Origin: Haliotis rufescens
Taxonomy: Eukaryota
Reading direction: 5' to 3'
Assembly: GCF_023055435.1 (NCBI RefSeq)
Contig: NW_025964046.1
Location: 2,604,001 to 2,668,000 of the forward strand
Length of the DNA stretch: 64,000 bases
The notes under the pieces were generated by a model. The model was not told where the DNA came from. It saw nothing but the letters and a program-made list of their open reading frames with translations, and ran no database searches. Both the position numbers and the translations under genes were made by a program. This document shows, piece after piece, positions 73-64,000 of the stretch (position 1 is the stretch's first letter; the number at the start of each line of letters is the position of its first letter).

Positions 73-2643
73 CTATACTGCTTGTGTCAGAATTCTGTCC
101 CTTACATGGACCCATACATCACTTTGAGGATCAGGAAAGTCATGTAGTTGGATGATATCCTCCTCGTCTGTTACATTCAGCAGCAGTTCAGGTAGTCGAC
201 CACGGTTCACGTTTCCCACCATGAGCAGAATCACTCTGTTAGGGTTGAGGTTGGAAATGTAGTAAGCTGTTGACTTAATGATAAAGTAGGACCAGGGGTC
301 ATCCAGGAAATCGTCGGACACAACAAGTACTGTCTTCCAGCTTTTGTTAATGCTTTCTACAACATGGTCAGCTACGTAAGGACCAGGTAGGAAATCTCTG
401 TGGGGAAGAATAAGCTTCAGTCCAAGTAGATCCTCCAGTCCTATACGTAGATCTTGCATTACAAACTGAAGCTCTTCATCCGAGTGGGCTACGTAAGCAT
501 CTTTGTTGAAGTTTTGTCTAGTGACCCGCTGGATCCCACGACCCATCAGGACCAAAATGTGATGTGCAATCCTTGTCCAGTTCCGTGACACCAGCATGGC
601 AGACACAAGTAGAAGAGCTATTAAACATATCAGTGTTATGGAGACTGGCAGCCAAAATCGACCTTGACATGAAGTCCAGTGGTAATTAAACTCGTTGTAC
701 ACTGTATGGGTTGTTGTAAGAGCACCATATTCAGTAACACATGAATAGTTCCCATTGCTGTCAAAGGTAACCGACGATGCAAATATCCACCTAACAAACA
801 AGAGAGACTGGCATGAGCAGGAGAGAGGGTTTCCCTTCAGCCTCAGGACCAGCTTGTTCTTCTGTCCGAGACTCTCCAACATATCCATTGTGTCATCGTC
901 AAAGTAGGTGATGGAGTTCACTGATAGGTCCAGGATGTGCAGGTCAGGCAGGTCATTGTGTTCAAAAGGAACAGACACAAGGTTATTTCTGGACACATTC
1001 AGACTGATCAGTGTCCTGATGGACCCCATATCCATATACCGTATGTCATTCCCTAATATCTCTAAATAACGTAAAGCATGCATCGTCTTTAGTCCCTCCA
1101 GTACTGAACCTCCTCTTCTGAGTGTTTCCTTGTCGAAACCCATATTGTTCAATGCAAGAGACGTCAGATTTGGAATTGTGAGCAAGAAATCTTTTGTCAT
1201 CCCCCTACCTTCATTGCCAGAAAGATCAACTTCATTTAAGAAGCTCATCCCGTTAATTTGCTTTACAAAGCCCCATGCTCCATTGTAGGACAGATCTAAT
1301 TTTGCTAAATGTGACGAACCTGTAATACCCGTTATAAAAAACTCCCCAAAAGAACCAGTTATTCCCCTGAATATACAGATACGTAGATTAGGAGGAAAAC
1401 GTATTCCCGCCTCAAAGGATTCTAACTTTGATACAGAACAATTTTCGGGACTAATTCTGTGCCTATTAAGATTATAGAGTCCGTTGTCAGTCACTTTAAT
1501 TTGAGATTTTAAACTGCCTTGTCCTAAGTCATACCTGCGTTTAATAAATTTATGTTGATCAGAAGCATCTAAAAACAACAGATGTTTACATAAACTCATC
1601 AGGAGAAATGTAGATTGATCCCCTAAAATATTGTTATTTGATAAATCTAGATATTTAATACAACGTGAAAGGACAAGTATTAAATTTTCGTCAAGGTAAA
1701 TAATGTTGGTATAGCTGAGATCCAGATGTTCGATGCAAATATGTGTCAGATAAATTAGTGTTTCCTTGGTTATAAACTTGCTTTGAAGGTTTCGATTTCG
1801 ACTAACATACCTGTTGGAATTTCTCATGAGAACTTGAGATACGTTTTTACCATTAAGGTCATAGAACGCACGTAGAGCCATAGCAGTTGGTAAGGTCATA
1901 ACGTTTTCCAGAACTATTTTGGAAATATTTTTGAAGGGTAGAAATGCTCCAGCATGAAATGCAAGAAGTTTGGAATCTTTTACATCCAACACCTGAACAG
2001 ATGTATTCTCAAAAACGGAGAATGTGTGGTTTTGTAAAACGGTAATAGCACTGTAAATACAGTCATCATCAGATCCAGTCCCTATATTCAAAGTTACCAG
2101 TTTTTGCAAATACCCAAATCCAACTCCAAATATGTCATGTTGGAACGTATCAATTGTCAGTGTTTCTACGTTTATTAACCATTTGAATATCCAATCCGGA
2201 GTAGTTCCTCTACGTCCTCTCAGTCGGCAGTCGTTGTTACCAATGTTCAACTCTGTAAGACTTTGTAGAGGACGGAAGACATCTTCTGGATAGGTGTGAT
2301 TGTCCAGTTGGAGATTATTGTTATTAAGGCGTAAACTGAGAAGGAGGGATAAACCTTTAAATGCGTTTGCTTCCAACCTTGATACTTGACAGTTTACAAT
2401 GTTCAAATACAACAATCGGGGAAGACACACAAACGCCTGGTCCCTGAGAACCATTATGTTGTTCCCGCTGAGATCCAGACTGACAGAGTTGAGAGGGAGA
2501 TCACCAGGAACAGAGGTAAGGTTGAGGTTCTGACAGTCAACACGGCTACCACCAAGCTGGGGGTCTGGCTTTATTTGACATGTCTTCTGGCTTGTAGAAG
2601 AGGTCACAGTTAGTGTCAGGATAAGGCCACAGATGATCTTCAT
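73..2643 (-). CDS. Toll-like receptor (single cysteine-cluster type), copy 1, intact, 856 aa
   Basis: Signal peptide MKIICGLILTL, LRRNT (C..VDC), many LxxLxLxxN repeats, LRRCT NPLSCSC, TM segment FWLPVSITLICLIALLLVSAMLV, TIR with DAYVAHS and BB-loop RDFLPG; one uninterrupted ORF. Confidence 0.95.
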   Translation of the reverse strand: MKIICGLILTLTVTSSTSQKTCQIKPDPQLGGSRVDCQNLNLTSVPGDLPLNSVSLDLSGNNIMVLRDQAFVCLPRLLYLNIVNCQVSRLEANAFKGLSLLLSLRLNNNNLQLDNHTYPEDVFRPLQSLTELNIGNNDCRLRGRRGTTPDWIFKWLINVETLTIDTFQHDIFGVGFGYLQKLVTLNIGTGSDDDCIYSAITVLQNHTFSVFENTSVQVLDVKDSKLLAFHAGAFLPFKNISKIVLENVMTLPTAMALRAFYDLNGKNVSQVLMRNSNRYVSRNRNLQSKFITKETLIYLTHICIEHLDLSYTNIIYLDENLILVLSRCIKYLDLSNNNILGDQSTFLLMSLCKHLLFLDASDQHKFIKRRYDLGQGSLKSQIKVTDNGLYNLNRHRISPENCSVSKLESFEAGIRFPPNLRICIFRGITGSFGEFFITGITGSSHLAKLDLSYNGAWGFVKQINGMSFLNEVDLSGNEGRGMTKDFLLTIPNLTSLALNNMGFDKETLRRGGSVLEGLKTMHALRYLEILGNDIRYMDMGSIRTLISLNVSRNNLVSVPFEHNDLPDLHILDLSVNSITYFDDDTMDMLESLGQKNKLVLRLKGNPLSCSCQSLLFVRWIFASSVTFDSNGNYSCVTEYGALTTTHTVYNEFNYHWTSCQGRFWLPVSITLICLIALLLVSAMLVSRNWTRIAHHILVLMGRGIQRVTRQNFNKDAYVAHSDEELQFVMQDLRIGLEDLLGLKLILPHRDFLPGPYVADHVVESINKSWKTVLVVSDDFLDDPWSYFIIKSTAYYISNLNPNRVILLMVGNVNRGRLPELLLNVTDEEDIIQLHDFPDPQSDVWVHVRDRILTQAV

Positions 2644-3745
2644 TGTGATGGCAATTTGAATAGATCTCGGTTCTGTTCCGTGTTGCAGTTCTTGATCAGT
2701 TTTAGTTGAAATCTAGAATGTATGAAGAATATATGTAAATAAAAGAATCCGTAAAACATACTTCCCTACCTGCAAGCACATTGGAGTGATTGATTGATTG
2801 AGTGAGTGTGTTAAAATGGTAGTTTATCGGCCATATAATGGCTAGAATAAGGTATTTAAGAGCATTAAACGCTTTGAAAATTATAATACAGTATATAATA
2901 TTAAACCAGGCTATAGATAACCAGGAAAAAAGGAAGATCACCGTACGAGGGACCATTTTTTTTATGGTTATTCAACCCCTAACGACGATGCAGCCCCTTA
3001 CAATTTTCGTTAATGACATAATTTACTAATTGGTAAACAATGCACTGTACTTCCTGTTAAAACAAAGAAATGATTAAATGGTAGCTTAAATTTGTAAAAG
3101 GGTACTGATTGATCATGCGTTGAGATACGAATCCCTTGTGGTGGACAAATCAAGATAGTCAAGCAAGCCATGCTTTACTGTGATTTCTTCATTTACACTG
3201 TCATCATCATCTTCGCCTAAATCCAACGACCCCAGTTTTCATAATGATATAAGAATTACTTAAAAAGAGGATATGCTGATTATTGTTCTAATTAAAATCC
3301 TCGAAGCTTTTTTTTTTAGTCTTACAAAGCTCAAATTTGGTTTCTAATAAAACAGACTCAGCTATGTTAGAAAATACTAGTTAAGCGAAAGTAACAATGT
3401 TTTGTATTTAACATGTTCTACCTGATTTTTCTATAAAAGATTTGTGTCATAACAATATTTATGAACGAAATTATGCCAATGAATACAACTTCTTATGTTA
3501 GACTGGCTTACAAAGCAGGAGCTTATGTTGAAACTGCGTTTGGGAATGTAATTGACATTGTCCAATGCGGGCGAAATCTCTTTGCTTGGCTGGCCACCCA
3601 TTCATATCTATCAGGTTACAGCGAGTGCACCTTCGAAGCTTATATTAGGTTATGTTAACAAAGGCCGTCGAGTCTATTCTCCTACCTTTTTTATGTCATG
3701 TTGGTAAGATTCGGTGACCGACGTATTGTCTCTTAAACGGATACT

Positions 3746-3864
3746 TGCTTGATAAAGGTGTTAGGATCTACACCGAAACGTCGCACTAATTGTAATAAAG
3801 AAGTTGTTCATCCATAGAACTCGTCTTACTTCATCACTCCAACTTCTAAATGCCACTCAAAGAA
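3746..3864 (+). mobile_element. 119-bp Penelope-like retroelement remnant with a minimal hammerhead-like motif
   Basis: Absent from the paralogous site 10860-10875; flanked by GGATACT/GGGTACT; TGC-TTGATAAA-GGTG..CACC-GAAACGTC-GCA then AATAAA. Confidence 0.6.
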
Positions 3865-5233: not shown

Positions 5234-5827
5234 GCAAGTATTTCAACAACATGTGGTGGGACGGGTATTTCAACAACCTGTGGTCGGACGAGTATTTCAA
5301 CAACAGGGGGTCAGACGTATATTTCAACAACAGGGGCTCAGACATAAATTTCAACAACAGGGGGTCAGACGTATATTTCAACAACAGGGGATTGGACGAG
5401 TGTTTCAACAATAGGTGGTCAGACGTATATTTCACCAACAGGGGGTCAGACGTATATTTCAACAACAGGGGGTCTGACGTATATTTCAACAACAGGGGAT
5501 CGGACGAGTGTTTCAACAACATGGGGTCAGACGTATATTTCACCAAAAGGGGGTCAGACGTATATTTCATCAACAGGGGGTCAGACGTATATTTCAACAA
5601 CAGGGGATCGGACGAGTGTTTCAACAACAGGGGGTCAGACGTATATTTCACAAACAGGGGCTCAGACGTATATTTCAACAACAGGGGGTCAGACGTATAT
5701 TTCAACAACAGGGGGTCAGACGTTTATTTCAAAAACAGGTGGGTCAGACGTATATTTCAACAACAGGGGGTCAGACGTATGTTTCAACAACAGGGTGTCA
5801 GACGAGTATTTCAACAACATTGGGACG
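5234..5827. repeat. 27-bp minisatellite array 1 (TCAGACGTATATTTCAACAACAGGGGG)
   Basis: Direct tandem units; translate as (SDVYFNNRG)n. Confidence 0.95.
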
Positions 5828-6828: not shown

Positions 6829-6955
6829 GGACGAGTATTTCCACAACATGTGGTGGGACGAGTATTTCAACAACAGGGGGGTCAGATGAGATGAGTATTT
6901 CAACAATATGTGGTGGGACGAGTATTTCAACAACATGTGTTTGGACGAGTATTTC
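6829..6955. repeat. Distal degenerate part of the 27-bp array (also ~15734-15920, 28773-28903, 39262-39390, 48860-49010)
   Basis: GGACGAGTATTTCAACAACATGTG units resume right after the TGT...ACA insertion. Confidence 0.8.
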
Positions 6956-7218: not shown

Positions 7219-9770
7219 CTATACTGCTTGTGTCAGAATTCTGTCCCTTACATGGACCCATACATCACTGTGAGGATCAGGGAAGTCATCAAGTTGGATG
7301 ATATCCTCCTCGTCAGTTACATTCAGCAGCAGTTCAGGAAGTCGACCACGGTTCACGTTTCCCACCATGAGCAGAATCACTCTGTTAGGGTTGAGGTTGG
7401 AAATGTAGTAAGCTGTTGACTTAATGATAAAGTAGGACCAGGGGTCATCCAGGAAATCGTCGGACACAACCAGTACTGTCTTCCAGCTTTTGTTAATGCT
7501 TTCTACAACATGGTCAGCTACGTAAGGACCAGGTAGGAAATCTCTGTCGGGAAGAATAAGCTTCAGTCCAAGTAGATCCTCCAGTCCTATACGTAGATCT
7601 TGCATTACAAACTGAAGCTCTTCATCCGAGTGGGCTACGTAAGCATCTTTGTTGAAGTTTTGTCTAGTGACCCGCTGGATCCCACGACCCATCAGGACCA
7701 AAATGTGATGTGCAATCCTTGTCCAGTTCCGTGACACCAGCATGGCAGACACAAGTAGAAGAGCTATTAAACATATCAGTGTTATGGAGACTGGCAGCCA
7801 AAATCGACCTTGACATGAAGTCCAGTGGTAATTAAACTCGTTGTACACTGTGTGGGTTGTTGTAAGAGCACCATATTCAGTAACACATGAATAGTTCCCA
7901 TTGCCGTCAAATGCTGAAAATATCCACCGAACAAACAAGAGAGACTGGCATGAGCAGGAGAGAGGGTTTCCCTTCAGCCTCAGGACCAGCTTGTTCTTCT
8001 GTCCGAGACTCTCCAACATATCCATTGTGTCATCGTCAAAGTAGGTGATGGAGTTCACTGTTAGGTCCAGGATGTGCAGGTCAGGCAGGTCATTGTGTTC
8101 AAAAGGAACAGACACAAGGTTATTTCTGGACACATTCAGACTGATCAGTGTCCTGATGGACCCCATATCCATATACCGTATGTCATTCCCTACTATCTCT
8201 AAATAACGTAAAGCATGCATCGTCTTTAGTCCCTCCAGTACTGACCCTCCTCTTCTGAGTGTTTCCTTGTCGAAACCCATATTGTTCAATGCAAGAGACG
8301 TCATATTTGGAAATGAGAGCAAGAAATCTTTGTCATCCCCCTACCTTCATTGCCGGAAAGATCGACTTCATTTAAGAAGCTCAACCCGTTAATTTGCTTT
8401 ACAAAGCCCCATGCTCCATTGTAGGACAGATCTAATTTTGCTAAATGTGACGAACCTGTAACACCCGTTATGAAAAACCTCCCCAGGCGAGTAAACGTTC
8501 CCCTCAACATACAGATACGTAGATTAGGAGGAACACGTATTCCCGCCCCTACTGATTCTAACTTTGATACAGAACTATGTTCTGAAACAGCCATGTGCCT
8601 GGTAAGACTATGAAGTCTGTTTTGAGTCACTTTTAACTTAGGGTCAAGATTGCCTTCTCCTGAGTTATACATGTGGCTGTTGAATTTGTATTGGTCAGAT
8701 AAATCTAAAAAAAAAAGATTTTTACATACACTCATTCGGAAAAATGTAAATGGATCCCCTAAAATATTGTTGTTTGATAAATCTAGATATTTAATACAAC
8801 GCGAAAGGAGAAGTATAAAATTTTCGTCAAGGTAAATAATGTGGCTATTGCTGAGATCCAGATGTTCGATGCAAATATGTGTCAGATAAATTAGTGTTTC
8901 CTTGGTTATAAGCTGGCTTCGAAGGTTTCGATTTCGACTGACATACCTGTTGGAATTTCTCATGAGAACTTGAGATACGTTTTTACCATTAAGGCCATAG
9001 AACGCACGTAGAGCCATAGCAGTTGGTAAGGTCTTAACGTTTTCCAGAACTATTTTGGAAATATATTTGAAGGGTAGAAATGCTCCAGCATGAATTGCAA
9101 GAAGTTTGGAATCTTTTACATTCAGCACCTGTACAGATGTATTCTCAAAAACGGAGAATGTGTGGTTTTGTAAAACGGTAATAGCAAAATAAATACAGTC
9201 ATCATCAGATTCAGTCCCTATATTCAAAGTTACCAGTTTTTGGAAATACCCAAATCCACTTCCAAATATGTCATGTTGGAACGTATCAATTGTCAGTGTT
9301 TCTAAATTTATTAACCATTTGAATATCCAATCCGGAGTAGTTCCTCTTATACGGCAGTCGTTGTTACCAATGTTCAACCCTGTAAGACTTTGTAGAGGAC
9401 GGAAGACATCTTCTGGATAGGTGTGATTGTCCAGTTGGAGATTATTGTTATTAAGGCGTAAACTGAGAAGGAGGGATAAACCTTTAAATGCGTTTGCTTC
9501 CAACCGTGATACTTGACTGTTTACAATGTTCAAATACATCAATCTGGGAAGACGCACAAACGCCTGGTCCCTGAGAACTGTTATGTTGTTCCCGCTGAGA
9601 TCCAGACTGACAGTGTTGGGAGGGAGATCACCAGGAACAGAGGTAAGGTTGAGGTTCTGACAGTCAACACGGCTGCCACCAAGCTGGGGGTCTGGCTTTA
9701 TTTGACATGTCTTCTGGCTTGTAGAAGAGGTCACAGTTAGTGTCAGAATAAGGCTACAGATGATCTTCAT
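7219..9770 (-). pseudogene. Toll-like receptor copy 2, frameshifted (489 aa N-part plus 367 aa C-part)
   Basis: Colinear with copy 1. AAATCTTTGTCAT at 8324-8336 has T3 where the other copies have T4. Also a 3-codon deletion in LRRCT near 7910. Confidence 0.85.
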
Positions 9771-11823: not shown

Positions 11824-14679
11824 TGCAAGTATTTCAACAACACATGGTGGGACGAATACTTCAATAGCATGTGGTTGGACGGGTATTTCAACAACATGTG
11901 GTTGGACGGGTATTTCAACAACCTTTGGTAGGACTAGTATTTCAACAACAGGGGATCGGACGACTGTTTCAACAACAGGGGGCCAGACGTATATTTCAAC
12001 AACAGGGGTTCAGACGTATATTTAAAAAACAGGGGGGTCAGACGTATATTTCAACAACAGGGGCTCAGACAAGTATTTCAACAACAGGGGATCGGACGAC
12101 TGTTTCAACAACAGGGGGTCAGACGTATGATTCAACAACAGGGGCTCAGACGTTTATTTCAAAAACAGGGGGGTCAGACGTTTATTTCAAAAACAGGGGG
12201 TCAGACGTATATTTCAACAACAGGGGCTCAGACGTATATTTAAACAACAGGGGGTCAGACGTTTATTTCAACAACAGGGGGGTCAGACGTATATTTCAAC
12301 AACAGGGGATCGGACAAGTATTTCAAGAACAGGGGTTCAGACGTATATTTCAACAACAGGGGTTCAGACGTTTATTTAAAAAACAGGGGGGTCAGACGTA
12401 TATTTCAACAACAGGGGCTCAGACAAGTATTTCAACAACAGGGGATCGGACGACTGTTTCAACAACAGGGGGTCAGACGTATATTTCAAAAATAGGGGCT
12501 CAGACGTTTATTTCAAAAACAGGGGGGTCAGACTTATATTTCAACAACAGGGGCTCAGACGTATATTTCAACAACAGGGGGTCAGACGTTTATTTCAACA
12601 ACAGGGGGTCAGACGTATATTTCAACAACAGGGGGTCAGACAAGTATTTCAAGAACAGAGATTCAGACGTATATTTCAACAACAGGCGTTCAGACGTTTA
12701 TTTCAACAACAGGGGGTCAGACGTATATTTCAACAACAGGGGCTCAGACAAGTATTTCAAGAACAGGGGTTCAGACGTATATGTAAACAACAGGGGGTAT
12801 GACGTATATTTCAAAAACAGCTGGGTCAGACAAGTATTTCAAGAACAGGGGTTCGGACGTTTATTTCAAAAACAGGGGGGTCAGACGTATATTTCAACAA
12901 CAGGGGCTCAGACAAGTATTTCAACAACAGGGGTTCAGACGTATATTTCACCAACAGGGGGTCTGACGTATATTTCAAAAACAGGGGGCTCAGACGTATA
13001 TTTCAAGAACAGGGGCTCAGACAAGTATTTCAAGAACAGGGGATCAGACGTATATTACACCAACAGGGGGTCTGACGTTTATTTCAAGAACAGGGGGTCA
13101 GACAAGTATTTCAAGAACAGGGGTTCAGACGTTTATTTCAAAAACAGGGGGGTCAGATGTATATTTCAACAACAGGGGCTCAGACAAGTATTTCAACAAC
13201 AGGGGTTCAGACGTTTATTTCAAAAACAGGGGGGTCAGATGTATATTTCAACAACAGGGGATCGGACGACTGTTTCAACAACAGGGGGTCAGACGTATAT
13301 TTCAACAACAGGGGGTCACACGTATATTTCAAAAACAGGGGGGTCAGACGTATATTTCACCAACAGGGGGTCTGACGTATATTTCAACATCAGGGGGTCA
13401 GACCTATATTTCAACAACAGGGGATCGAACGATTGTTTCAACAACAGGGGGTCAGACGTATATTTCAACAACAGGCGCTCAGACGTTTATTTAAAAAACA
13501 GGGGGGTCAGACGTATGTTTCAAGAACAGGGGGGGTCAGACGTATATTTCAACAACAGGGGGTCAGACGTATATTTCAACAACAGGGGGTCTGACGTATA
13601 TTTCAAAAACAGGTGGTCACACGTATATTTCAACAACAGGGGGTCAGACGTATATTTCAACAACAGGGGGTCAGACGTATATTTCAACAACAGGGGGTCA
13701 GACGTATATTTCAACAACATTTGGTCACACGTATATTTGAACAACAGGGGTTCAGACGTATATTTCAACAACAGGGGGTCAGACGTATATTTCAAGAACA
13801 GGGGATCGGACGACTGTTTCAACGACAGGGGGTCAGACGTATATTTCAACAACAGGGGCTCAGACGTTTATTTCAAAAACAGGGGGGTCAGACGTATATT
13901 TCAACAACAGGGGCTCAGACGTTTATTTCAAAAACAGGGGGTCAGACTTTTATTTCAACAACAGGTGGGTCAGACGTATATTTCATCAACAGGGGGTCAG
14001 ACGCATATTTCAACAACAAGGGGGTCAGACGTCTATTTCAACAACAGGGGTTCAGACGTTTATATCAATAACAGGGGGGTCAGACGTATATTTCAACAAG
14101 ACGGGCTCAGACAAGTATTTCAAGAACAGGGGGCCAGACGTATATTTCAACAACAGGGGGTCAGACGTATTTTTCAAGAACAGGGGATCGGACGACTGTT
14201 TCAACGACAGGGGGTCAGACGTATATTTCAACAACAGGGGCTCAGACGTTTATTTCAAAAACAGGGGGGTCAGACGTATATTTCAACAAGAGGGGGTCAC
14301 ACGTATATTTCAACAACAGGGGGTCAGACGTATATGTCAACAACAGGGGCTCAGACAAGTATTTCAAGAACAGGGGTTCAGACGTTTATATCCAAAACAG
14401 GGGGGTCAGACGTATATTTCAACAACAGGGGCTCAGACAAGTATTTCAACAACAGGGGGATCAGACAAGTATTTCAAGAACAGGGGTTCAGACGTATATT
14501 TCAGCAACAGGGGCTCAGTCGTAAATTTCAACAACAGAGGGTCAGACGTATATTTCAACAACAGGGGATCGGACAAGTGTTTCAACAACAGGGGGTCAGA
14601 CGTATATTTCACCAACAGGGGGTCAGACGTATATTTCAACAACAGGGTGTCAGACGAGTATTTCAACAACATTGGGACG
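11824..14679. repeat. 27-bp minisatellite array 2 (~2.9 kb)
   Basis: Same unit, with 27/28-bp variants from G-run length. Confidence 0.95.
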
Positions 14680-19708: not shown

Positions 19709-19841
19709 NNNNNNNNNNNNNNNNNNNNNNNNNNNNNNNNNNNNNNNNNNNNNNNNNNNNNNNNNNNNNNNNNNNNNNNNNNNNNNNNNNNNNNNNNNNN
19801 NNNNNNNNNNNNNNNNNNNNNNNNNNNNNNNNNNNNNNNNN
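19709..19841. other. 133-N run
   Basis: N bases. Confidence 0.99.
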
Positions 19842-27720: not shown

Positions 27721-28772
27721 TGTAAGGATCGCAATAAATTTCTATGTCAAATCATTTAAGATCAAAAGTTTTTATTCACATTCTCATTTCCATTCTCATT
27801 CTCAATTGTTCATATGTCATATGTCAAACATCATATTTCATGGAGAATATAATTCAATGTTATTGTTAGTTCATGTTCAATTATGGGGGCGGTCGGGTAG
27901 GCTAGTGGTTAAAGCGTTCGCTCGTCACGCCGAAGACCCGGGTTCGATTACCGACATGGGTACAATGTGTGAAGCCCATTTCTGGTGTCCCCCGCCGTGA
28001 TATTGCTGGAATATTGCTAAAAGCGGCGTAAAACCATACTCACTCACTCACTCACTCATGTTCAAATAAAGTTCATAATATGTATCACATCTTATCATCA
28101 TCAATTATCAACAAATACCCAAAACCTTCTCCTCGTTGGAGTTGGAAGATTGACTGCAAAGGAAAAATAAACAATAATAAGTTTGCAGTTCAATATGTAA
28201 ACAAAACAATAACAATGTATAAAAATTACTGAAACAACAAAAGTTGACAAAAGACATTTAATTGTACCAAAATAATTACAAGAGCATTTGCACAGAACGA
28301 AAATGCATAATATAATGTTATATGATGTAATTTAAATTGAAAATACTTGATGAAAATACAACTTTACTAGAATGTAAACATTAGTGATTGAAAACTGAAC
28401 ACATTATCTTTACGTCAGAAAAAAAAGGTTACAAATACAACATTTTGGGAATTAAAATTGCTACAGAAATATATTGACAATGGAAAAGAAATACAAATGC
28501 ATGAAAACACACCATTTTGGCAGACCCATATTCTTTTAATTCATTATTTTCTTATTTTTGACCGCATGGGTCCTAATTCTCTCAATGCATAAACTAAAAA
28601 GCATGGCATTAAGCCTTAACAGACTTACGTCCCTTGGTATCCTGAAGGATACATTAAAAAACACTCTTTTTACTGCTAAATTTGGAATGAAAATTGAAGA
28701 AAACTTTTAACTTTAATAATTTGGAGAAAATAATAGAAATTATTTTAGAGATGCTATTTTTTTACCGTAACA
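27721..28772. mobile_element. Solo-LTR-like TGT...ACA element, copy 3
   Basis: Same termini and GGACG TSD. Confidence 0.7.
27884..28055 (+). mobile_element. tRNA-derived SINE (duplicated with the cassette)
   Basis: Same sequence and site. Confidence 0.85.
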
Positions 28773-38100: not shown

Positions 38101-38209
38101 GGACGAGTGTTTCAACAACAGGGGGTCAGACGTATATTTCACCAACAGGGGGTCAGACGTATATTTCAACAACAGGGTGTCAGACGAGTATTTCAACAAC
38201 ATTGGGACG
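35108..38209. repeat. 27-bp minisatellite array 4 (~3.1 kb)
   Basis: Same unit. Confidence 0.95.
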
Positions 38210-53659: not shown

Positions 53660-54358
53660 ATCTGTCTGTCTGTCTGTCGCTCCCTCTCTAGCTCTCCCCT
53701 CTCTCTCCCCTCTCTCCTTCTCAATCTCTCTCTTCCCTCTCTTTCGCTCTCTCTACTCCCACTCCCTTTCTAGCTCTCCCTCTCTCTCCCCTCCCTCCCC
53801 TCTCCCTCCCCTCTCTCCCCTCTCTCCTTCTCAATCTCTCTCTCGCTCTCTCTCCTCCCTCCCCTCTCCCTCCCCTCTCTCCCCTCTCTCCTTCTCAATC
53901 TCTCTTTCGCTCTCTCTACTCCCACTCCCTCTCTAGCTCTCCCTCTCTCTCCCCTCCCTCCCGTCTCCCTCCCCTCCCTCCCCTCTCCCTCTCTCCTTCT
54001 CAATCTCTCTCTCCCCTCTCTCTCCCTCTCTCTCTCCTCTCTCTCCCTCTCTAGCTCTCCCTCTCTCTCCCCTCCCTACCCTCTCCCTCCCCTCCCTCCC
54101 CTGTCCCTCTCTCCTTCTCAATCTCCCTCTCCCCTCTCTCTCGCTCTCTCTCCTCTCTCTCCCTCTCTAGCTCTCCCCTCTCTCTCCCCTCTCTCTCGCT
54201 CTCTCTCCGCTATCTCCCTCTCTAGCTCTCCCCTCTCTCTCCCCTCTCTCTCGCTCTCTCTCCTCTATCTCCCTCTCTAGCTCTCCCTCTCTCTCTCCCC
54301 TCCCCCCCTCTCCCTCCCCTCTCTCTCTCTCTCTTTCGCTCTCTCTCTCTAGCTCTCT
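53660..54358. repeat. CT-rich polypyrimidine low-complexity tract
   Basis: (CT)n/(CCCT)n with periodic CTAGCTC; shorter homologs follow each N-run. Confidence 0.9.
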
Positions 54359-54740
54359 TACTCTGTGCGTGTGTGAGAGTATTCAGTTAATCAGAGAGTC
54401 GTATGTATGTATTAACAACTAACAGATAAACAATACCCTGTAACATTGGTTTCAATAGACGTACCTGCTATCACGCTCCTCGCACTGAATCCAAACAAAT
54501 CATCACCACTTGTGACCCTGCTTAAGTGAAACTGTAGAAATACTTCCGCCTAACACAAACTGCTGCGCGTTAATGTCCGTGTTTCGCTAGGGCTGATGGT
54601 TAGAAGGCCGTCGTCTCAGTACAGGCGTTCTGCTTTGCGGTCTCGGGTAAAAAGCTGTTTTATGTAAAATGCTTGGTGGTACCGATGGAACAGAACATTT
54701 AAAGGCTAGGCTAAAAATGATTGTTTCAAGTTATGTAGGC

Positions 54741-55595
54741 TGGGTAACAGTGGGACGTTATCCATTATATACACTGGGTAACAGAGGGACGTTAGCAATT
54801 ATATACACTGTGGAGCATACCTCGCAAGCCATTATATACACTGGGTAACAGAGGGACGTTAGCCATTATATACACTGTGGAGCATACCTCGCAAGCCATT
54901 ATATACACTGGGTAACAGAGGGACGTTAGCCATTATATACACTGTGGAGCATACCTCGCAAGCCATTATATACACTGGGGAACAGAGGGACGTTAGCCAT
55001 TATATACACTGTGGAGCATACCTCGCAAGCCATTATATACACTGGGTAACAGAGGGACGTTAGCCATTATATACACTGTGGAGCATACCTCGCAAGCCAT
55101 TATATACACTGGGTAACAGAGGGACGTTAGCCATTATATACACTGTGGAGCATACCTCGCAAGCCATTATATACACTGCGTAACAGAGGGACGTTAGCCA
55201 TTGTATACACTGTGGAGCATACCTCGCAAGCCATTATATACACTGGGTAACAGAGGGACGTTAGCCATTATATACACTGTGGAGCATACCTCGCAAGCCA
55301 TTATATACACTGGGTAACAGAGGGACGTTAGCCATTATATACACTGTGGAGCATACCTCGCAAGCCATTATATACACTGATTAACAGAGGGAGGTTAGCC
55401 ATTATATACACTGTGGAGCATACCTCGCAAGCCATTATATACACTGGGTAACAGAGGGACCTTAGCCATTAAATACACTGTGGAGCATACCTCGCAAGCC
55501 ATTATATACACTGATTAACAGAGGGAGGTTAGCCATTATATACACTGTGGAGCATACCTTGAAAGCCATTATTTAGGCTGGGTAACAGAGGGACG
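54741..55595. repeat. 67-bp (34+33 dimer) minisatellite
   Basis: CCATTATATACACTGGGTAACAGAGGGACGTTAG alternating with CCATTATATACACTGTGGAGCATACCTCGCAAG. Confidence 0.92.
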
Positions 55596-58352
55596 TTATC
55601 CGTTATATAGACTGGGGAACAGATGTCGTTAGCCATTATATAGACTGGGTAACTGATGTCTTTAGTCGTAATATAGACTGGGGAACACATGTCGTTAGTC
55701 ATTATACACACTGGGTAACTGATGTCTTTAGTCGTAATATAGACCGGGGAACACATGTCGTTAGTCATTATATAGAGTGGGTAACAGATGTCTTTAGTCA
55801 TGATATAGACTGGGGAACACATGTCGTTAGTCATTATACACGCTGGATAACAGATGTCTTTAGTCGTTATATAGACTGGGGAACACATGTCGTTAGCCAA
55901 TTTACACACTGGGTAACAGATGTCTTTAGTCGTAATATAGACTGGGGAACACATGTCGTAAGTCATTATACACACTGGGTAACAGATGTCTTTAGTCGTA
56001 ATATAGACTTGGGAACACATGTCGTTAGTCATTATATAGAGTGGGTAAAAGATGTCTTTAGTCGTGATATAGACTGGGGAACACATGTTGTTAGTCATTA
56101 TACACACTGGGTAACATATGTCTTTAGTCGTAAAATAGACTGGAGAACACATGTCGTCAGTCATTATATAGGCTGGGTAACAGATATCATTAGTCGTGAT
56201 ATAGACTGGGGATCACATGTCGTTAGTCATTATACATGCTGGGTAACAGATGTCTTCAGTCGTAATAAAGACTGGGGAACACATGTCTTAAGTCATTATA
56301 CACACTGGGTAACAGATGTCGTTAGTGATTATACACACTGAGTAACAGATGTCTTTAGTCATGATATAGACTGGGTAACAGATGTCTTTAGTCGTGATAT
56401 AGACTGGGGAACACATGTTGTTAGTCATTATACACACTGGGTAACAGATGTCGTTAGTGATTATACACACTGAGTAACAGATATCTTTAGTCATGATATA
56501 GACTGGGTAACAGATGTCTTTAGTCGTGATATAGACTGGGGAACACATGTCATTAGTCATTATACACGCTGGGTAATAGATGTCTTTAGTCGTAATATAG
56601 ACTGGGGAACACATGTCGTTAGTCATTATACACACTGGGTAACATATGTCTTTAGTCGTAATATAGACTGGGGAACACATGTTGTTAGTCATTATACACA
56701 CAGAGTAACAGATGTCTTTAGTCATGATATAGACTGGGTAACAGATGTCTTTAGTCGTGATATAGACTGGGGATCACATGTCGTTAGTCATTATACACAC
56801 TGGGTAACAGATGTCTTTAGTCGTAATATAGACTGGGGAACACATGTCGTTAGTCATTATACACACTGGGTAACAGATGTCTTTAGTCGTAATATAGACT
56901 GGGGAACAAATGTCGTTAGTCATTATACACACTGGGTAACATATGTCTTTAGTCGTAATATAGACTGGAGAACACATGTCGTTAGTCACTATAAACACTG
57001 GGGATCAGATGTCTTTAGTCGTAATATAGACTGGGGAACACATGTCGTTAGTCATTATACACGCTGGGTAACAGATGTCTTCAGTCGTAATATAGACTGG
57101 GGAACACATGTCTTAAGTCATTATACACACTTGGTAACAGATGTCTTTAGTCGTAATATAGACTGGGGAACACATGTTGTTAGTCATTATACACACTTGG
57201 TAACAGATGTCGTTAGTCATTATACACACTGAGAGACAGATGTCTTTAGTCGTGATATAGACTGGGGAACACATGTCGTTAGTCATTATACACACTGGGT
57301 AACAGATGTCTTTAGTCGTGATATAGACTGGGGAACACATGTCGTTAGTCACTATAAACACTGGGGATCAGATGTCTTTAGTCGTAATATAGACTGGGGA
57401 ACAGATGTCATTAGTCCATATACACACTGGGTAACATATGTCTTAAGTCAGTATACACACTGGGTAACAGACGTCTTTAGTCGTAACATAGACAGGGGAA
57501 CACATGTCTTAAGTCAGTATACACACTGGGTAACAGATGTCTTTAGTCGTAACATAGACAGGGGAACACATGGCTTAAGTCATTATACACACTTGGTAAC
57601 ATATGTCTTTAGTCGTAATATAGACTGGGTAACAGATGTCTTTAGTCAGTATACACACTGGGTAACAGATGTCTTTAGTCGTAATATAGACTGGGTAACA
57701 GATGTCTTTAGTCATTATACACACTGGGTAACAGATGTCTTTAGGTGTAATATACACTGGGTAATAGATGCCTTTATTCGTAACATAGACTGGGGAGCAC
57801 ATGTGTTTAGTCATTATACACACTGGGTAACAGATGTCTTAAGTCGTATTATAGACTAGGTAACATATGTCTTTAGTCAGTATACACACTGGGTAACAGA
57901 TGTCTTTAGTCGTAATATAGACTGGGTAACAGATGTCTTTAGTCAGTATACACACTGGGTAACAGATGTCTTTAGTCGTAATATAGACTGGGTAACAGAT
58001 GTCTTTAGTCATTATACACACTGGGTAACAGATGTCTTTAGGTGTAATATACACTGGGTAATAGATGCCTTTATTCGTAACATAGACTGGGGAGCACATG
58101 TGTTTAGTCATTATACACACTGGGTAACAGATGTCTTAAGTCGTATTATAGACTAGGTAACATATGTCTTTAGTCAGTATACACACTGGGTAACAGATGT
58201 CTTTAGTCGTAATATAGACTGGGTAACAGATGTCTTTAGTCAGTATACACACTGGGTAACAGATGTCTTTAGTCGTAATATAGACTGGGTAACAGATGTC
58301 TTTAGTCGTAACATAGACTGGGGAACACATGTCTTAAGTCATTATACACACT
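55596..58352. repeat. 33-bp monomer / 66-bp dimer minisatellite
   Basis: AGTCATTATACACACTGGGTAACAGATGTCTTT alternating with AGTCGTAATATAGACTGGGGAACACATGTCGTT. Confidence 0.92.
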
Positions 58353-59375
58353 GGATGTTTGTGCCCTTCGTGTGGATGTTTGTGGCCTCCGTGTGGATGT
58401 TTGTGGCCTCCGTGTGGATGTTTGTGCCCTCCGTGTGGATGTTTGTGCCCTCCGTGTGGATGTTTGTGGCCTCCGTGTGGATGTTTGTGCCCTCCGTGTG
58501 GATGTTTGTCCGCTCCGTGTGGATGTTTGTGCCCTCCGTGTGGATGTTTCTCCCATTGTGGATGTTTGTGGCCTCCGTGTGGATGTTTGTGCCCACTGTG
58601 TGGATGTTTGTGCCCTCCGTGTGGATGTTTGTCCCCTCCGTGTGGATGTTTGTGCCCACTGTGTGGATGTTTGTCCCCTCCGTGTGGATGTTTGTCCCCT
58701 CCGTGTGGATGTTTGTGGCCTCCGTGTGGATGTTTGTGCCCACTGTGTGGATGTTTGTCCCCTCCGTGTGGATGTTTGTCCCCTCCGTGTGGATGTTTGT
58801 GGCCTCCGTGTGGATGTTTCTCCCATTGTGGATGTTTGTGGCCTCCGTGTGGATGTTTGTGCCCACTGTGTGGATGTTTCTCCCATTGTGGATGTTTGTG
58901 GCCTCCGTGTGGATGTTTGTGCCCACTGTGTGGATGTTTGTGCCCTCCGTGTGGATGTTTGTCCCCTCCGTGTGGATGTTTGTGCCCACTGTGTGGATGT
59001 TTGTCCCCTCCGTGTGGATGTTTGTCCCCTCCGTGTGGATTTTTGTGGCCTCCGTGTGGATGTTTGTGCCCTCCGTGTAGATGTTTCTCCGCTCCGTGTG
59101 GATGTTTGTGCCCTCCGTGTGGATGTTTCTCCCATTGTGGATGTTTGTGCCCACTGTGTGGATGTTTGTCCGCTCCTTGTGGATGTTTCTCCCATTGTGG
59201 ATGTTTGTGTCCTCCGTGTGGATGTTTGTCCGCTCCGTGTAGATGTTTGTGCCCTCCGTGTGGATGTTTGTGCCCTCCGTGTGGATGTTTGTGCCCACTG
59301 TGTGGATGTTTGTGCCCTCCGTGTGGATGTTTGTGCCCTCCGTGTGGATGTTTGTGCCCTCCGTGTAGATGTTTA
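58353..59375. repeat. 21-bp minisatellite (GGATGTTTGTGCCCTCCGTGT) with an 18-bp variant
   Basis: Direct tandem units. Confidence 0.93.
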
Positions 59376-59377
59376 TC

Positions 59378-59826: not shown

Positions 59827-59987
59827 GGAGGGGTGGGGCAGCCTAGTGGTTAAAGTGTTCGCTCGTCACGCCGAAGACCCGGGTTCGATTCCCGACATGG
59901 GTACAATGTGTGAAGCCCATTTCTGGTGTCCCCTGCCGTGATATTGCTGGAATATTGCTAAAAGTAGCCTGAAACCAAACTCACTCA
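59827..59987 (+). mobile_element. tRNA-derived SINE, independent insertion
   Basis: Same family, unrelated flanks. Confidence 0.8.
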
Positions 59988-61538: not shown

Positions 61539-61703
61539 GTGGCGGTCGGGTAGCCTGGTGGTTAAAGCGTTCGCTCGTCACGCCGAAGACCCGGGTTCTA
61601 TTCCCGACATGGGTAAAATGTGTGAAGTCCATTTCTGGTGTCCCCCGCCGTGATATTGTTGGAATATTGCTAAAAGCGGCGAAAAATCAAACTCACTCAC
61701 TCA
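61539..61703 (+). mobile_element. tRNA-derived SINE, independent insertion with 12-bp TSD
   Basis: CTCTCCAAACTA (61527-61538) and CTCTCTAAACTA (61704-61715) flank the element. Confidence 0.85.
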
Positions 61704-61797
61704 CTCTCTAAACTATAATCTCTATTAGGGCCTCTCCCAGGACTCAGGCTTCAGTATTTTGCCTCCAATCTACCTTGTGTTCTAAATTCATGCGACA

Positions 61798-62040: not shown

Positions 62041-62403
62041 AAAAATCTACATTCATGCAACTGGGAGGACCAGCTGGATCATTTCCACGTTGCATCTGAC
62101 CGTGACCAGGCTTGAAACCCATCGTGCAAGCTATTACCACCATGATCTTCACCCAAGGCGGTTCCACTCAGTCTCACGTCCAAAGCTTCGACGCCCAGCT
62201 CAGCGACAAACTCCAATTAAATATGAGTAAGGTATGGGCAAAGGGAACTAACTCTAACTATCATCAAACATACATTTGTCGTTACAAAATACAACAATAA
62301 TTAAGCAAAGGGTCAAACATATAACATTGTTCGGATATGACAGAACCAGATGATTTATACTACACAAAAAGGGTTTTAGTCAGTGACATATTTTGCATTC
62401 AAC

Positions 62404-63083
62404 CTATACTGCTTGTGTCAGAATTCTGTCCCTTACATGGACCCATACATCACTGTGAGGATCAGGAAAGTCATCAAGTTGAATGATATCCTCCTCGTCT
62501 GTTACATTCAGCAGTAGTTCAGGAAGTCGACCACGGTTCACGTTTCCCACCATGAGCAGAATCACTCTGTTAGGGTTGAGGTTGGAAATGTAGTAAGCTG
62601 TTGACTTAATGATAAAGTAGGACCAGGGGTCATCCAGGAAATCGTTGGACACAACCAGTACTGTCTTCCAGCTCTTGTTAATGCTTTCTACAACATGGTC
62701 AGCTACAAACTGACCAGGTAGGAAATCTCTGTGGGGCAGAATAAGCTTCAGTCCAAGTAGATCCTCCAGCCCTTTACGTAGATCTTGCATTACAAACTGA
62801 AGCTCTTCATCCGAGTGGGCTACGTAAGCATCTTTGTTGAAGTTTTGTCTAGTGACCCGCTGGATCCCACGACCCATGAGGACCAAAATGTGATGTGCAA
62901 TCCTTGTCCAGTTCCGTGACACCAGCATGGCAGACACAAGTAGAAGAGCTATTAAACACATCAGTGTTATGGAGACTGGCAGCCAAAATCGACCTTGACA
63001 TGATGTCCAGTGGTAATTAAAGTCGTTGTACACTGTATGGGTTGTTCTAAGAGCACCATATTCAGTAACACATGAATAGTTCC
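62404..63083 (-). pseudogene. 5'-truncated Toll-like receptor copy 7 (end of LRRCT, TM and TIR only)
   Basis: Homology to the other copies stops at GAATAGTTCC (63083) and runs directly into 27-bp repeats; in-frame stop at 63109-63111. Confidence 0.9.
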
Positions 63084-63233
63084 AACAACAGGGGATCGGA
63101 CGGGTATTTCAACAACATGTGATGGGTCGAGCATTACAACAACAGGGGGTCAGACGTGTATTTCAACAACAGTGGATCGGACGAGTGTTTCAACAACAGG
63201 GGGTCAGACGAGTATTTCAACAACAATGGGACG
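63081..63233. repeat. 27-bp minisatellite remnant fused to truncated TLR
   Basis: About five units between the TLR breakpoint and the TGT...ACA element. Confidence 0.85.
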
Positions 63234-64000
63234 TGTAAGGATCGCAATGAATTTCAATGTCAATTCATCCAAGATCAAAAGTTTTATTCACATTCTCATT
63301 TCCATTCTCATTCTCAATTGTACATATGTCATATGTCAAACATCATATTTCATGGAGAATATAATTCAATGTTATCGTTAGTTCATGTTCAAATACAGTT
63401 CATAATATGCATTACATCTTATCATCATCAATTATCAACAAATACCCAAAACCTTATCCTCGTTGGAGTTGGAAGATCGACTGCAAAGGAAAACTAAACA
63501 ATCATAAGTTTGCAGTTCAATATGTAAACAAAACAATAACAATGTATGAAAATTACTGAAACAACAAAACTTGACAAATGACATTAAATTGTACCAAAAT
63601 AATTACAAGAGCATTTGCACAGAAAGAAAATGCATAATATAATGTTATATGATGCAATTTAAATTGAAAATACTTGATGAAAATACAACTTAAAATTTAC
63701 TAGAATGTAAACATTAGTGATTGAAAACTGAACACATTATCTTTACGTCAGAAAAAAAAGTTACAAATACAACATTTTGGGAATTAAAATTGCTACAGAA
63801 ATATATTGACAATGGAAAAGAAATACAAATGCATGAAAACACACCATTTTGGCAGACCCATATTCTTTTAATTCATTCTTTTCTTATTTTTTACCGCATG
63901 GGTCCTAATTCTCTCAATGCATAAACTAAAAAGCATGGCATTAAGCCTTAACAGACTTACGTCCCTTGGTATCCTGAAGCATATATAAAATAACATTCTT
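63234..64000. mobile_element. Solo-LTR-like element, SINE-free, cut by the window end
   Basis: GGACG|TGTAAGG start; colinear with 47994 onward. Confidence 0.65.

What the first reader, a model, noticed from the sequence alone, without database searches (positions are those of the whole stretch)
73..64000. TLR cassette array in which genes alternate with a G-run minisatellite: candidate recombination-driven receptor diversification locus
Seen: seven same-strand TLR copies. Copies 1-6 are each separated by a strand-asymmetric 27-bp array (G4-G6 run in most units, all on +) of about 0.6, 2.9, 5.6, 3.1 and 2.4 kb. The one rearrangement that truncates a gene (copy 7) ends in this repeat, and the paralogs are mosaics. 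Known: mollusc TLR families expand by tandem duplication, and G-rich repeats such as immunoglobulin switch regions and minisatellites are recombinogenic. Inference: the arrays may act as exchange hotspots that change TLR copy number and shuffle variants, in the germline or possibly in haemocytes. The simpler alternative is passive co-duplication.
Basis: partly seen in the sequence, partly recalled or inferred. Interest (0 to 1): 0.8.

Follow-up and report, generated by a model that had tools for sequence, protein, structure and literature searches.

The report
TLR cluster with passenger minisatellite
Twelve head-to-tail Toll-like receptor genes have each been copied together with a 27-base repeat array found nowhere else in the genome; recombination does shuffle the receptors, but the repeat mostly looks like a passenger, so this is an ordinary if tidy gene-family cluster.

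Summary
The window has seven same-strand (minus) TLR copies. Copies 1-6 are separated by 27-bp arrays of 581, 2842, 5583, 3088 and 2390 bp. Copy 7 is a TM-TIR stump joined to the repeat, and the paralogs are mosaics.

The window is part of a 103-kb, 12-copy cluster with nine arrays. All 237 genome-wide matches to the 27-mer dimer lie in those arrays, so the repeat is private to this locus.

The hotspot reading is not supported:
- Arrays and both their flanks fall into the same families.
- Three arrays are about 99.7% identical end to end and lie inside the young duplicated blocks.
- About 3 of 16 exchange-tract ends lie in arrays, against 4.4 expected. Most lie in coding sequence or unique spacer.
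- The copy-7 junction has only 3 bp of microhomology.
- The G-runs lie on the strand that serves as template for TLR transcription, G is only 25-26%, and canonical G4 motifs are nearly absent.
- A second TLR cluster carries its own private 79-bp array, and kb-scale minisatellites are common in this genome.

Best reading: birth-and-death evolution by unequal crossing-over and gene conversion, with the minisatellite co-duplicated. A modest recombinogenic effect (under about 1.7-fold) cannot be excluded.

The parts
73..2643 (-). TLR copy 1, intact (856 aa)
   Evidence: ORF; LRR_8, LRR_4 and TIR hits
5239..5819 (+). 27-bp array A_12 (21.5 units, the shortest)
   Evidence: TRF; unit statistics
6829..6955 (+). 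Degenerate 4-6-unit patch of the 27-mer, about 260 bp 3' of the stop codon of copy 2. Equivalent patches lie at 15734-15842 and 48860-49010.
   Evidence: TRF
7219..9770 (-). TLR copy 2, frameshifted pseudogene (ORFs of 489 and 367 aa)
11830..14671 (+). 27-bp array A_23 (104.5 units). Its first 1511 bp are 99.87% identical to A_34.
16160..18745 (-). TLR copy 3, intact (861 aa, with an 8-residue C-terminal extension)
19709..19841 (.). 133-nt N run in the non-coding upstream spacer of copy 3. Identical N runs lie at 32693-32825 and 43177-43309 at the same cassette position.
   Evidence: flanks collinear with a sister cassette at a 133-bp spacing; letters not read
22130..27712 (+). 27-bp array A_34 (205.5 units). 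It carries an extra central 2.6 kb with internal duplications of 812-bp and 273-bp period.
27884..28053 (.). Very high-copy interspersed element of about 170 bp in the 3' flank of copy 4. It is also in the 3' flanks of copies 2, 3 and 5, and at 59826-59991 and 61541-61706.
   Evidence: depth of about 7 million
29167..31728 (-). TLR copy 4, intact (853 aa)
35114..38201 (+). 27-bp array A_45. It matches A_34 over the first 1519 bp (99.3%) and over the last about 1.4 kb (99.85%, measured on the terminal 1331 bp).
39654..42213 (-). TLR copy 5, pseudogene by a 2-bp deletion near 40375 (ORF 40342-42213 gives 623 aa)
45596..47985 (+). 27-bp array A_56 (88.6 units, with a 25-G tract near 46664). It is about 99.7% identical end to end to two arrays left of the window.
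49274..51835 (-). TLR copy 6, intact (853 aa)
53661..59374 (.). Right edge of sub-cluster 1: a (TC)n tract at 53661-54358, a 66/67-bp satellite at 54756-58354 and a 21-bp satellite at 58352-59374. No 27-mer occurs here.
   Evidence: homology with the flanks of genes a and 8
62313..63083 (-). TLR copy 7: a 771-bp fragment (91 bp of 3' flank plus the last 680 nt of the CDS, covering TM and TIR). It is 99.6% identical to copy 8.
63083..63229 (+). 5.3-unit remnant of a 27-bp array joined directly to copy 7. The junction has TTC microhomology.
63227..64000 (.). Standard right flank of an array, forming the 3' flank of copy 8, whose gene begins just outside the window

Best explanation
The window is the right two-thirds of a roughly 103-kb cluster of 12 head-to-tail, intronless Toll-like receptor genes. 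The cluster evolves by birth and death. Unequal crossing-over and gene conversion between cassettes about 9-13 kb long and 94-99.9% identical create, homogenise, shuffle and break copies. Seven copies are intact and five are broken.

The 27-bp minisatellite is a locally born spacer repeat. It was already part of the ancestral duplicated unit and has since been copied passively with it. Afterwards individual arrays change length by internal slippage or unequal sister-chromatid exchange.

Receptor shuffling relies mainly on the long homology of the genes and unique spacers themselves, not on the arrays.

Shown here: the architecture, the privacy of the repeat, the collinear array families, the mosaic genes and the positions of tract ends. 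Inferred: the recombination mechanisms, and that the arrays have no special role.
For: (1) The repeat is private to the locus. All 237 genome-wide matches to the 27-mer dimer (up to 3 mismatches) are forward and lie in the nine arrays of this cluster. A 401-bp array probe hits only C268:2573040-2668282, plus two weak hits elsewhere.

(2) Arrays are inherited with their flanks. The left flanks of genes a, b and 5, arrays ab, bc and 56, and the right flanks of genes b, c and 6 form one family. The left flanks of genes 2, 3 and 4, arrays 23, 34 and 45, and the right flanks of genes 3, 4 and 5 form another.

(3) Arrays ab, bc and 56 differ by 7 substitutions and two 3-bp indels in 2387 bp. The adjacent left flank has 16 substitutions in about 600 bp, and the right flank plus the 3' end of the gene has 14 in about 2230 bp. 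The arrays therefore lie inside the young blocks and are not hypervariable.

(4) Tract ends lie mostly in unique DNA:
- The cassette b junction lies within the 5' part of the CDS or the first 350 bp upstream.
- The copy c junction lies in the CDS, 940-1103 nt from the stop.
- The d/1 tract ends 23 bp 3' of the stop and at +2143 in the gene.
- About 3 of 16 ends lie in arrays, against 4.4 expected.

(5) Length change is internal. A_34 differs from A_45 only by a central 2.6-kb block that contains fresh duplications of 812-bp and 273-bp period.

(6) Controls. The C179 TLR cluster alternates genes with its own private 79-bp array, and the C445 cluster carries 158-bp and 64-bp arrays. Five of seven arbitrarily chosen 10-kb samples hold a minisatellite of 0.5 kb or more.

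(7) A run guessed to be RNA covers the gene plus 1.1 kb of 3' flank (28056-31760) but hardly touches the array. A small-RNA run has no reads on the array.
Against: Some exchange ends do involve arrays:
- The 99.87% tract between A_23 and A_34 stops at array position +1511.
- Between A_34 and A_45, divergence switches from 99.3% on the left to 99.85% on the right exactly at the 2.5-kb length difference.
- The copy-7 deletion ends in an array.

Four of 16 ends lie 120-660 bp left of an array, a zone that makes up 6.8% of the cluster (nominal P = 0.02). This test is post hoc and the events are not independent.

Four arrays contain a 19-28-nt poly-G tract that could be fragile. A larger duplication junction is a direct abutment of two other satellites at 58352-58354.

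The sample is small, so an enrichment of up to about 1.7-fold cannot be excluded. Only one assembly was examined, and the three cassettes that are more than 99% identical could not be verified with long reads.
Confidence: 0.74

Rival explanations
1. Germline hotspot: the 27-bp arrays are fragile or recombinogenic. Breaks that start in them are repaired from other cassettes, which raises cassette gain and loss and seeds conversion tracts that run out into the flanks. This is what has been proposed for the short tandem repeats around sea-urchin SpTrf genes.
For: Three tract ends lie inside arrays, and four more lie 120-660 bp left of an array (nominal P = 0.02, post hoc). The copy-7 deletion ends in an array. 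Four arrays contain poly-G tracts of 19-28 nt. Array lengths range from 0.58 to 5.58 kb. A second TLR cluster also interleaves genes with a private minisatellite.
Against: Arrays are not enriched for tract ends (3 of 16 against 4.4 expected). Three arrays kept the same 88.6 units, with only two 3-bp indels, through two duplications. Left and right flanks stay phylogenetically coupled across 6 of 9 arrays. The clearest mosaic junctions are inside coding sequence. Minisatellites are common in this genome, so their presence in a cassette needs no special explanation.
Confidence: 0.14
2. Programmed, switch-region-like somatic rearrangement in immune cells: transcription through the G-run arrays forms R-loops or G-quadruplexes, and array-to-array joining deletes or selects TLR cassettes in haemocytes.
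For: Only the superficial layout fits: a kb-scale array of short repeats containing G-runs lies upstream of each receptor gene, always in the same orientation.
Against: The G-runs are on the + strand, which is the template strand for the minus-strand TLR genes. Read-through RNA would therefore be C-rich, the opposite of switch regions (inference). G is only 25-26%, with a GC skew of about 0.17-0.20. G-runs are 22 nt apart. Outside the few poly-G or G-rich tracts there is no canonical G4 motif, and G4-aware folding of six consensus units predicts none. The putative RNA run barely covers the array. No joined array-to-array forms were seen, though Logan contigs cannot show rare variants.
Confidence: 0.02
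3. Assembly artefact: the three cassettes that are more than 99% identical (copies 3-5), or their order, come from mis-assembled haplotypes or repeats, which would exaggerate the regularity of the array.
For: Copies 3, 4 and 5 are 99.2-99.6% identical over their unique parts, and each is next to an N run at the same cassette position. Near-identical blocks also lie 65-75 kb apart, around copies b-c and 5-6.
Against: The copies carry private changes: loss of the stop codon in copy 3, a 2-bp deletion in copy 5, and arrays of 2.84, 5.58 and 3.09 kb. Three copies cannot be two alleles. The N runs have exactly the length of the homologous interval in an unmasked cassette, which fits masking rather than true contig breaks. 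The locus lies in the middle of a 5.4-Mb contig. Independent runs hold the gene and array sequences, though contigs cannot prove copy number.
Confidence: 0.07
4. The arrays have a cis function, such as an insulator, chromatin boundary, enhancer array or coding repeat, and are retained by selection in each cassette.
For: An array is kept in 9 of 10 spacers between cassettes (the tenth keeps 5 units). The same strand holds long ORFs because 27 is a multiple of 3, for example 11871-14684 at 937 aa. The array is also present in contigs labelled as a second organism.
Against: The ORFs break into five frames in A_34, and 1-bp register shifts occur. There is essentially no coverage in the putative RNA run and none in the small-RNA run. 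Array length ranges tenfold, and the 7/8 spacer has lost nearly all of its array. No conserved motif was tested.
Confidence: 0.03

Closest known systems
Tandem TLR expansions in molluscs and sea urchins (Saco et al. 2023, PMC10279657)
   Same: Lineage-specific, same-subfamily TLR copies arise by tandem duplication, with positive and negative selection acting on the paralogs. Here there are 12 same-strand copies, and this genome has several other TLR clusters. The LRR centre is fast-evolving and the TIR is conserved.
   Different: A text search of that paper found no mention of flanking repeats, unequal crossing-over or gene conversion. Earlier scan notes suggest this genome is an abalone, a gastropod rather than a bivalve. 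That is unchecked.
Sea-urchin Sp185/333 (SpTransformer) clusters bounded by short tandem repeats (PMC3091723, PMC5103432)
   Same: Clustered immune genes are interleaved with tandem repeats. There are segmental duplications of gene plus flanks, and repeats have been proposed to promote duplication, deletion and conversion.
   Different: In the sea urchin the GA and GAT repeats lie at the edges of the segmental duplications and at sites of deleted genes. Here the 27-bp arrays lie mostly inside the duplicated blocks, and only about 3 of 16 tract ends fall in them. The repeat here is a kb-scale minisatellite, not a microsatellite. Pseudogenes are frequent here (5 of 12) but are reported absent from Sp185/333.
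Ribosomal DNA units with intergenic-spacer sub-repeats (general knowledge)
   Same: A tandem gene array in which every unit carries its own internal spacer minisatellite. The spacer array is copied with the unit and varies in length by unequal exchange, and the sub-repeat is private to the array.
   Different: rDNA is strongly homogenised and its spacer repeats have known promoter and enhancer roles. Here the copies diverge (88-100% in the LRR region), many are broken, and no function of the array is evident.
Immunoglobulin switch regions (general knowledge)
   Same: kb-scale arrays of short repeats containing G-runs, one per downstream gene cassette, all in one orientation.
   Different: The G-runs here are on the strand that is template for TLR transcription, G is only 25-26%, no transcription through the arrays was seen, no array-to-array joints were seen, and no deaminase link is known. 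The resemblance is superficial.
Hypervariable human-type minisatellites (general knowledge)
   Same: Unit of 10-100 bp, interspersed variant repeats, G/C strand asymmetry, and internal duplications and unit indels.
   Different: Three paralogous arrays stayed unit-for-unit collinear through two duplications, which does not suggest extreme instability. Polarity and mutation rate could not be measured from one assembly.

Membership tests
Toll-like receptor | N-terminal leucine-rich-repeat ectodomain | tested here: met
   LRR_8 at E 1e-18 to 8e-21, plus LRR_4, LRR_1 and LRRNT, in all full-length copies. Matches to LRR structures.
Toll-like receptor | Single transmembrane helix followed by a cytoplasmic TIR domain | tested here: met
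   PF01582 TIR at 23.5-27.1 bits, above the 21.3 cutoff. TLR2 TIR at E 4e-12 and full-length TLR3 at E 2.8e-21, with the TLR3 match spanning residues 465-811 of copy 4, i.e. C-terminal LRRs, the membrane-spanning region and the TIR. A hydrophobic stretch precedes the TIR in the copy-7 ORF. No TM predictor was run.
Minisatellite | Head-to-tail array of 10-100-bp units with variant repeats, 0.5 kb or longer | tested here: met
   Period 27, 21-205 copies, 81-85% matches.
Switch-region-like recombination target | G-rich non-template strand relative to transcription of the adjacent gene (R-loop-prone) | tested here: not met
   G-runs are on the + strand while the genes are on the minus strand, so the G-runs are on the template strand. 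G is 25-26% and C 17-18%.
Switch-region-like recombination target | Array lies within a transcribed region | tested here: inconclusive
   The run guessed to be RNA (X15) covers 28056-31760 but has depth 0-9 on the array. This is one sample, and its RNA status is only a guess.
Switch-region-like recombination target | Somatic array-to-array deletional joints | not testable with these tools
   Only Logan contigs and one small-RNA run were available. Rare joints cannot be seen.
G-quadruplex-forming repeat | Four runs of three or more G separated by loops of 1-7 (or up to 12) nt | tested here: not met
   No such motif in five of nine arrays. The other four have only one or two poly-G or G-rich tracts each. 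G-runs are 22 nt apart, and G4-aware folding of six units predicts no quadruplex.
STR-bounded segmental duplication (SpTrf type) | Tandem repeats lie at the edges of the duplicated segments | tested here: not met
   Family I arrays lie inside the 5-9-kb young blocks. About 3 of 16 tract ends are in arrays against 4.4 expected. Partial exceptions: array +1511, the centre of A_34/A_45, and the copy-7 junction.
Genome-wide dispersed repeat or transposon-borne satellite | Copies scattered over many loci | tested here: not met
   All 237 matches lie in this cluster. Only two weak (67-73% identity) hits occur elsewhere.

The most novel reading that the evidence does not exclude
The private minisatellites that interleave TLR genes are not neutral passengers. 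This covers the 27-mer here and the unrelated 79-mer in the C179 cluster. On this reading they are fragile spacers whose breaks seed conversion tracts into the neighbouring flanks and raise cassette gain and loss. Individuals would then differ in TLR copy number and mosaic content, making this a mollusc counterpart of the STR-driven instability proposed for sea-urchin SpTrf genes.
Probability: 0.13. Interest if true: 0.6.

Novelty: new member of a known kind. Interest (0 to 1): 0.25.

Why it matters
If the arrays really promoted exchange, this locus would be a tractable model for how invertebrates generate variation in innate receptors between individuals. As it stands, it is a clean, well-resolved example of birth-and-death evolution in a TLR cluster. 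It also shows how locally born minisatellites are amplified as passengers of tandem gene duplication. That makes it useful as an annotation and as a caution against reading function into a regular layout, but it is not surprising to a specialist.

Tried and rejected
- Coding repeat: rejected. The long + strand ORFs in arrays exist only because 27 is a multiple of 3. They fragment in A_34, and the putative RNA run shows no coverage.
- Transposon-borne or genome-wide satellite: rejected, because the repeat is private to the locus.
- Canonical G-quadruplex: rejected, apart from the poly-G tracts.
- Small-RNA source: no reads in one miRNA-seq run.
- Reciprocal-exchange idea: A_12 plus A_34 is about twice A_45. 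I noted this and dropped it as a coincidence, because A_34's excess is explained by internal duplications.
- Cassette 5 switch: I first counted it as lying inside the array, at +92. Informative sites then placed it 116-386 bp left of the array, so I reclassified it.
- Protein Atlas look-up: unavailable.
The background therefore rests on seven arbitrarily chosen 10-kb pieces plus the flanks of this locus.
- Big protein search: not used, because the family was already clear. The species was not verified; run names are coded, and earlier notes call it red abalone.
- N runs: not filled and not read.

Full report
**What is there**

The window is G000:C268:2604001-2668000, from a 1.33-Gb assembly. 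All TLR reading frames lie on the minus strand:
- Copy 1: 73-2643, 856 aa.
- Copy 2: 7219-9770, frameshifted.
- Copy 3: 16160-18745, 861 aa.
- Copy 4: 29167-31728, 853 aa.
- Copy 5: 39654-42213, with a 2-bp deletion near 40375.
- Copy 6: 49274-51835, 853 aa.
- Copy 7: 62313-63083, a stump with only the transmembrane and TIR parts.

Pfam finds LRR and TIR domains. The best solved relatives are TLR3 and the TLR2 TIR domain.

TRF finds arrays of a 27-bp unit (consensus TATTTCAACAACAGGGGGTCAGACGTA). They lie at 5239-5819, 11830-14671, 22130-27712, 35114-38201 and 45596-47985, with a 5-unit remnant at 63083-63229. A run of four or more G occurs in 73-88% of units, always on the + strand.

**N runs**

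The three N runs are each 133 nt. They sit at the same cassette position, about 960 bp upstream of a start codon, in non-coding spacer. Their flanks align collinearly to an unmasked sister cassette outside the window, where the same flanks are also exactly 133 bp apart. The two sides are therefore most likely continuous.

I measured only that distance. A TRF table lists a low-complexity tract overlapping that interval in the sister cassette. I did not read, print or use those letters, and I make no claim about what is masked.

**The whole locus**

A protein search of the assembly and 70 kb of fetched flanks show that the window is part of a cluster. It has 12 same-strand copies, which I call a, b, c, d and 1-8, at C268:2568431-2671107. 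Nine large 27-bp arrays lie between them, of 0.58-5.58 kb. Seven copies are intact and five are broken (c, d, 2, 5, 7).

The cluster has two parts. Each begins with a 21-bp satellite and the same spacer. Each ends with the same upstream sequence, a (TC)n tract and a 33/66-bp satellite. Copy 7 occupies the position that gene a has in the first part.

**The repeat is private to the locus**

A 401-bp array probe hits only this locus, plus two weak matches elsewhere. The 27-mer dimer, allowing up to 3 mismatches, matches 237 times forward and 0 times in reverse in the whole genome. All 237 matches lie in the nine arrays.

A 26-bp sister satellite of 3.3 kb lies at the right edge of the cluster. 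But a repeat that exists only here cannot be a general recombination signal.

**Arrays travel with their flanks**

Identity matrices and shared 36-mers show two families in which left flank, array and right flank group together:
- Family I: the left flanks of genes a, b and 5; arrays ab, bc and 56; the right flanks of genes b, c and 6.
- Family II: the left flanks of genes 2, 3 and 4; arrays 23, 34 and 45; the right flanks of genes 3, 4 and 5.

The three family I arrays are 2387, 2393 and 2390 bp long. They differ by 7 substitutions and two 3-bp indels. By comparison there are 16 substitutions in the roughly 600-bp left flank, and 14 in about 2.2 kb of right flank plus the 3' end of the gene. 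The array lies inside the young duplicated block and is no more variable than its surroundings.

In family II the arrays share the first approximately 1515 bp and the last approximately 1.4 kb. A_34 has an extra 2.6-kb centre containing fresh duplications of 812-bp and 273-bp period. This is ordinary growth from inside the array.

**Where exchanges end**

I mapped segments of at least 98.8% identity and refined them with informative sites.
- Cassette b is like copy 6 up to its 5' coding region. It is like copies 3, 4 and 5 from there upstream. The switch lies in the 5' part of the CDS or the first 350 bp upstream.
- Copy c is like copy 6 for its 3' 939 nt (2 differences). It is like copy a for the rest (28 differences, against 135 to copy 6; Fisher P = 1e-6).
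- The d/1 tract ends 23 bp beyond the stop codon and at +2143 in the gene.
- Cassette 5 switches family 116-386 bp left of its array.
- Three ends lie in arrays: A_23/A_34 at +1511, the A_34/A_45 centre, and the array side of the copy-7 deletion.

With about 16 ends, 3 lie in arrays, which make up 27% of the cluster, so 4.4 would be expected. The upper confidence limit allows at most about 1.7-fold enrichment.

Four ends lie 120-660 bp left of an array, a zone that is 6.8% of the cluster (nominal P = 0.02). This is a post hoc observation on non-independent events. I report it as a weak hint only.

**The truncated copy**

Copy 7 is 99.6% identical to the same part of copy 8. Its sequence ...AATAGTTCC is joined to AACAACAGGGG... 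of a repeat unit. The only shared letters at the junction are TTC, within an imperfect 7-mer. This looks like an end-joining or slippage deletion of roughly 6 kb, not homologous exchange between arrays. One endpoint in a repeat that fills a quarter of each cassette is not remarkable.

**The switch-region analogy**

- The arrays have 25-26% G and 43% GC.
- The G-runs are on the + strand, which is the template strand for the minus-strand TLR genes. Read-through RNA would therefore be C-rich.
- The G-runs are 22 nt apart, so no canonical G4 motif exists. The exceptions are a single 25-28-G tract in arrays ab, bc and 56, and a G-rich block in array cd.
- A run guessed to be RNA covers 28056-31760, that is the gene plus a 1.1-kb 3' flank, but hardly touches the array. 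A small-RNA run gives nothing.
- DNA contigs of two organism labels hold the array.

**Controls**

Another TLR cluster, at C179:1.54-1.66 Mb, alternates genes with a 79-bp array. That array is likewise private to its cluster and has no G-run. The C445 cluster carries 158-bp and 64-bp arrays.

Five of seven arbitrarily chosen 10-kb samples contain a minisatellite of 0.5 kb or more. The flanks of this locus hold 42-, 55-, 22-, 21-, 66-, 33-, 26- and 17-bp arrays. A cassette of around 10 kb in this genome is therefore likely to contain a minisatellite by chance. Earlier scan notes also describe this genome as rich in locally born minisatellites (unchecked).

**Receptor diversification**

The central LRR block (aa 330-480) has dN 0.11 and dN/dS about 1.0. 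The C-terminal LRRs and TM-TIR have dN 0.016-0.018 and dN/dS 0.24-0.28. Nearest-neighbour patterns along the gene are patchwork. The locus is a recombination-shaped, diversifying receptor cluster, but the homology that drives the exchanges is that of the genes and spacers themselves.

**Comparison and verdict**

The closest published idea is STR-mediated instability of the sea-urchin Sp185/333 clusters, where repeats bound the duplicated segments. That defining feature is not met here. Structurally, the locus most resembles rDNA units with spacer sub-repeats (general knowledge). Tandem TLR expansion in molluscs is known.

I rate this a new member of a known kind, of low to moderate interest. 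The remaining open reading is a modest recombinogenic effect of the arrays, with probability about 0.13.

**Limits**

- Only one assembly was examined.
- There are no long reads and no data from other individuals or tissues.
- The number of mapped events is small.
- The species is not verified.

Noticed in passing
window 27884-28053; also 5941-6107, 14837-15011, 38373-38542, 59826-59991, 61541-61706: An element of about 170 bp with enormous depth (about 7 million) in contigs of two organism labels, so a very high-copy SINE- or MITE-like repeat. It is inserted in the 3' flank of copies 2-5 but absent from copies b, c, d, 1, 6 and 8. Contigs lacking it (joint 27870>28056) occur in all three contig runs.
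   Followed up: partly
G000:C179:1551541-1662264 (L008-L013): A second tandem TLR cluster alternates genes with a 79-bp minisatellite of 1.2-2.9 kb. That repeat is also found only in its own cluster. The C445:50.88-50.93 Mb cluster has 158-bp and 64-bp arrays.
   Followed up: partly
window 58352-58354, with ext 10198-14500 and L006: The cluster is a higher-order duplicate. The 21-bp satellite, spacer and 3' end of gene a reappear before copy 7 (98.4% over 933 bp). The upstream region of gene 6, with its (TC)n tract and 66-bp satellite, reappears after gene 8 (96%). The junction between the two parts is a direct abutment of the 66-bp and 21-bp satellites.
   Followed up: partly
window about 46664 (array A_56); also arrays ab, bc and cd left of the window: Single homopolymer tracts of 25-28 G inside three otherwise regular arrays, and a G-rich block with a 19-G run in array cd. 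One of the two 3-bp indels among the near-identical arrays is a GGG in this tract (in array bc).
   Followed up: partly
copies a, b, 1, 4 and 8; residues 330-480: The central LRR block evolves about six to seven times faster at non-synonymous sites than the C-terminal LRRs and TM-TIR (dN 0.11 against 0.016-0.018; dN/dS 1.0 against 0.24-0.28). Synonymous divergence is also higher there, which suggests stronger homogenisation of the 3' half of the gene.
   Followed up: partly
L007:545-3885 (window-equivalent 74545-77885): A 26-bp satellite (128 copies, 3.3 kb) that is a one-base-shorter relative of the 27-mer. It lies at the right edge of the cluster, next to 33-bp and 17-bp satellites.
   Followed up: partly
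L005 (ext 44942-46159, upstream of copy d): A perfect 608-bp tandem duplication (100% identical) in unique spacer, so very recent.
   Followed up: no
window 3746-3864: A 119-bp insertion in the upstream spacer of copy 1 relative to copy 2, seen as an alignment break.
   Followed up: no
window 6829-6955, 15734-15842, 48860-49010: Each cassette has a second, degenerate 4-6-unit patch of the 27-mer about 260 bp 3' of the stop codon and about 1 kb from the main array. The roughly 1-kb stretch between them may be an old insertion into one ancestral array.
   Followed up: no
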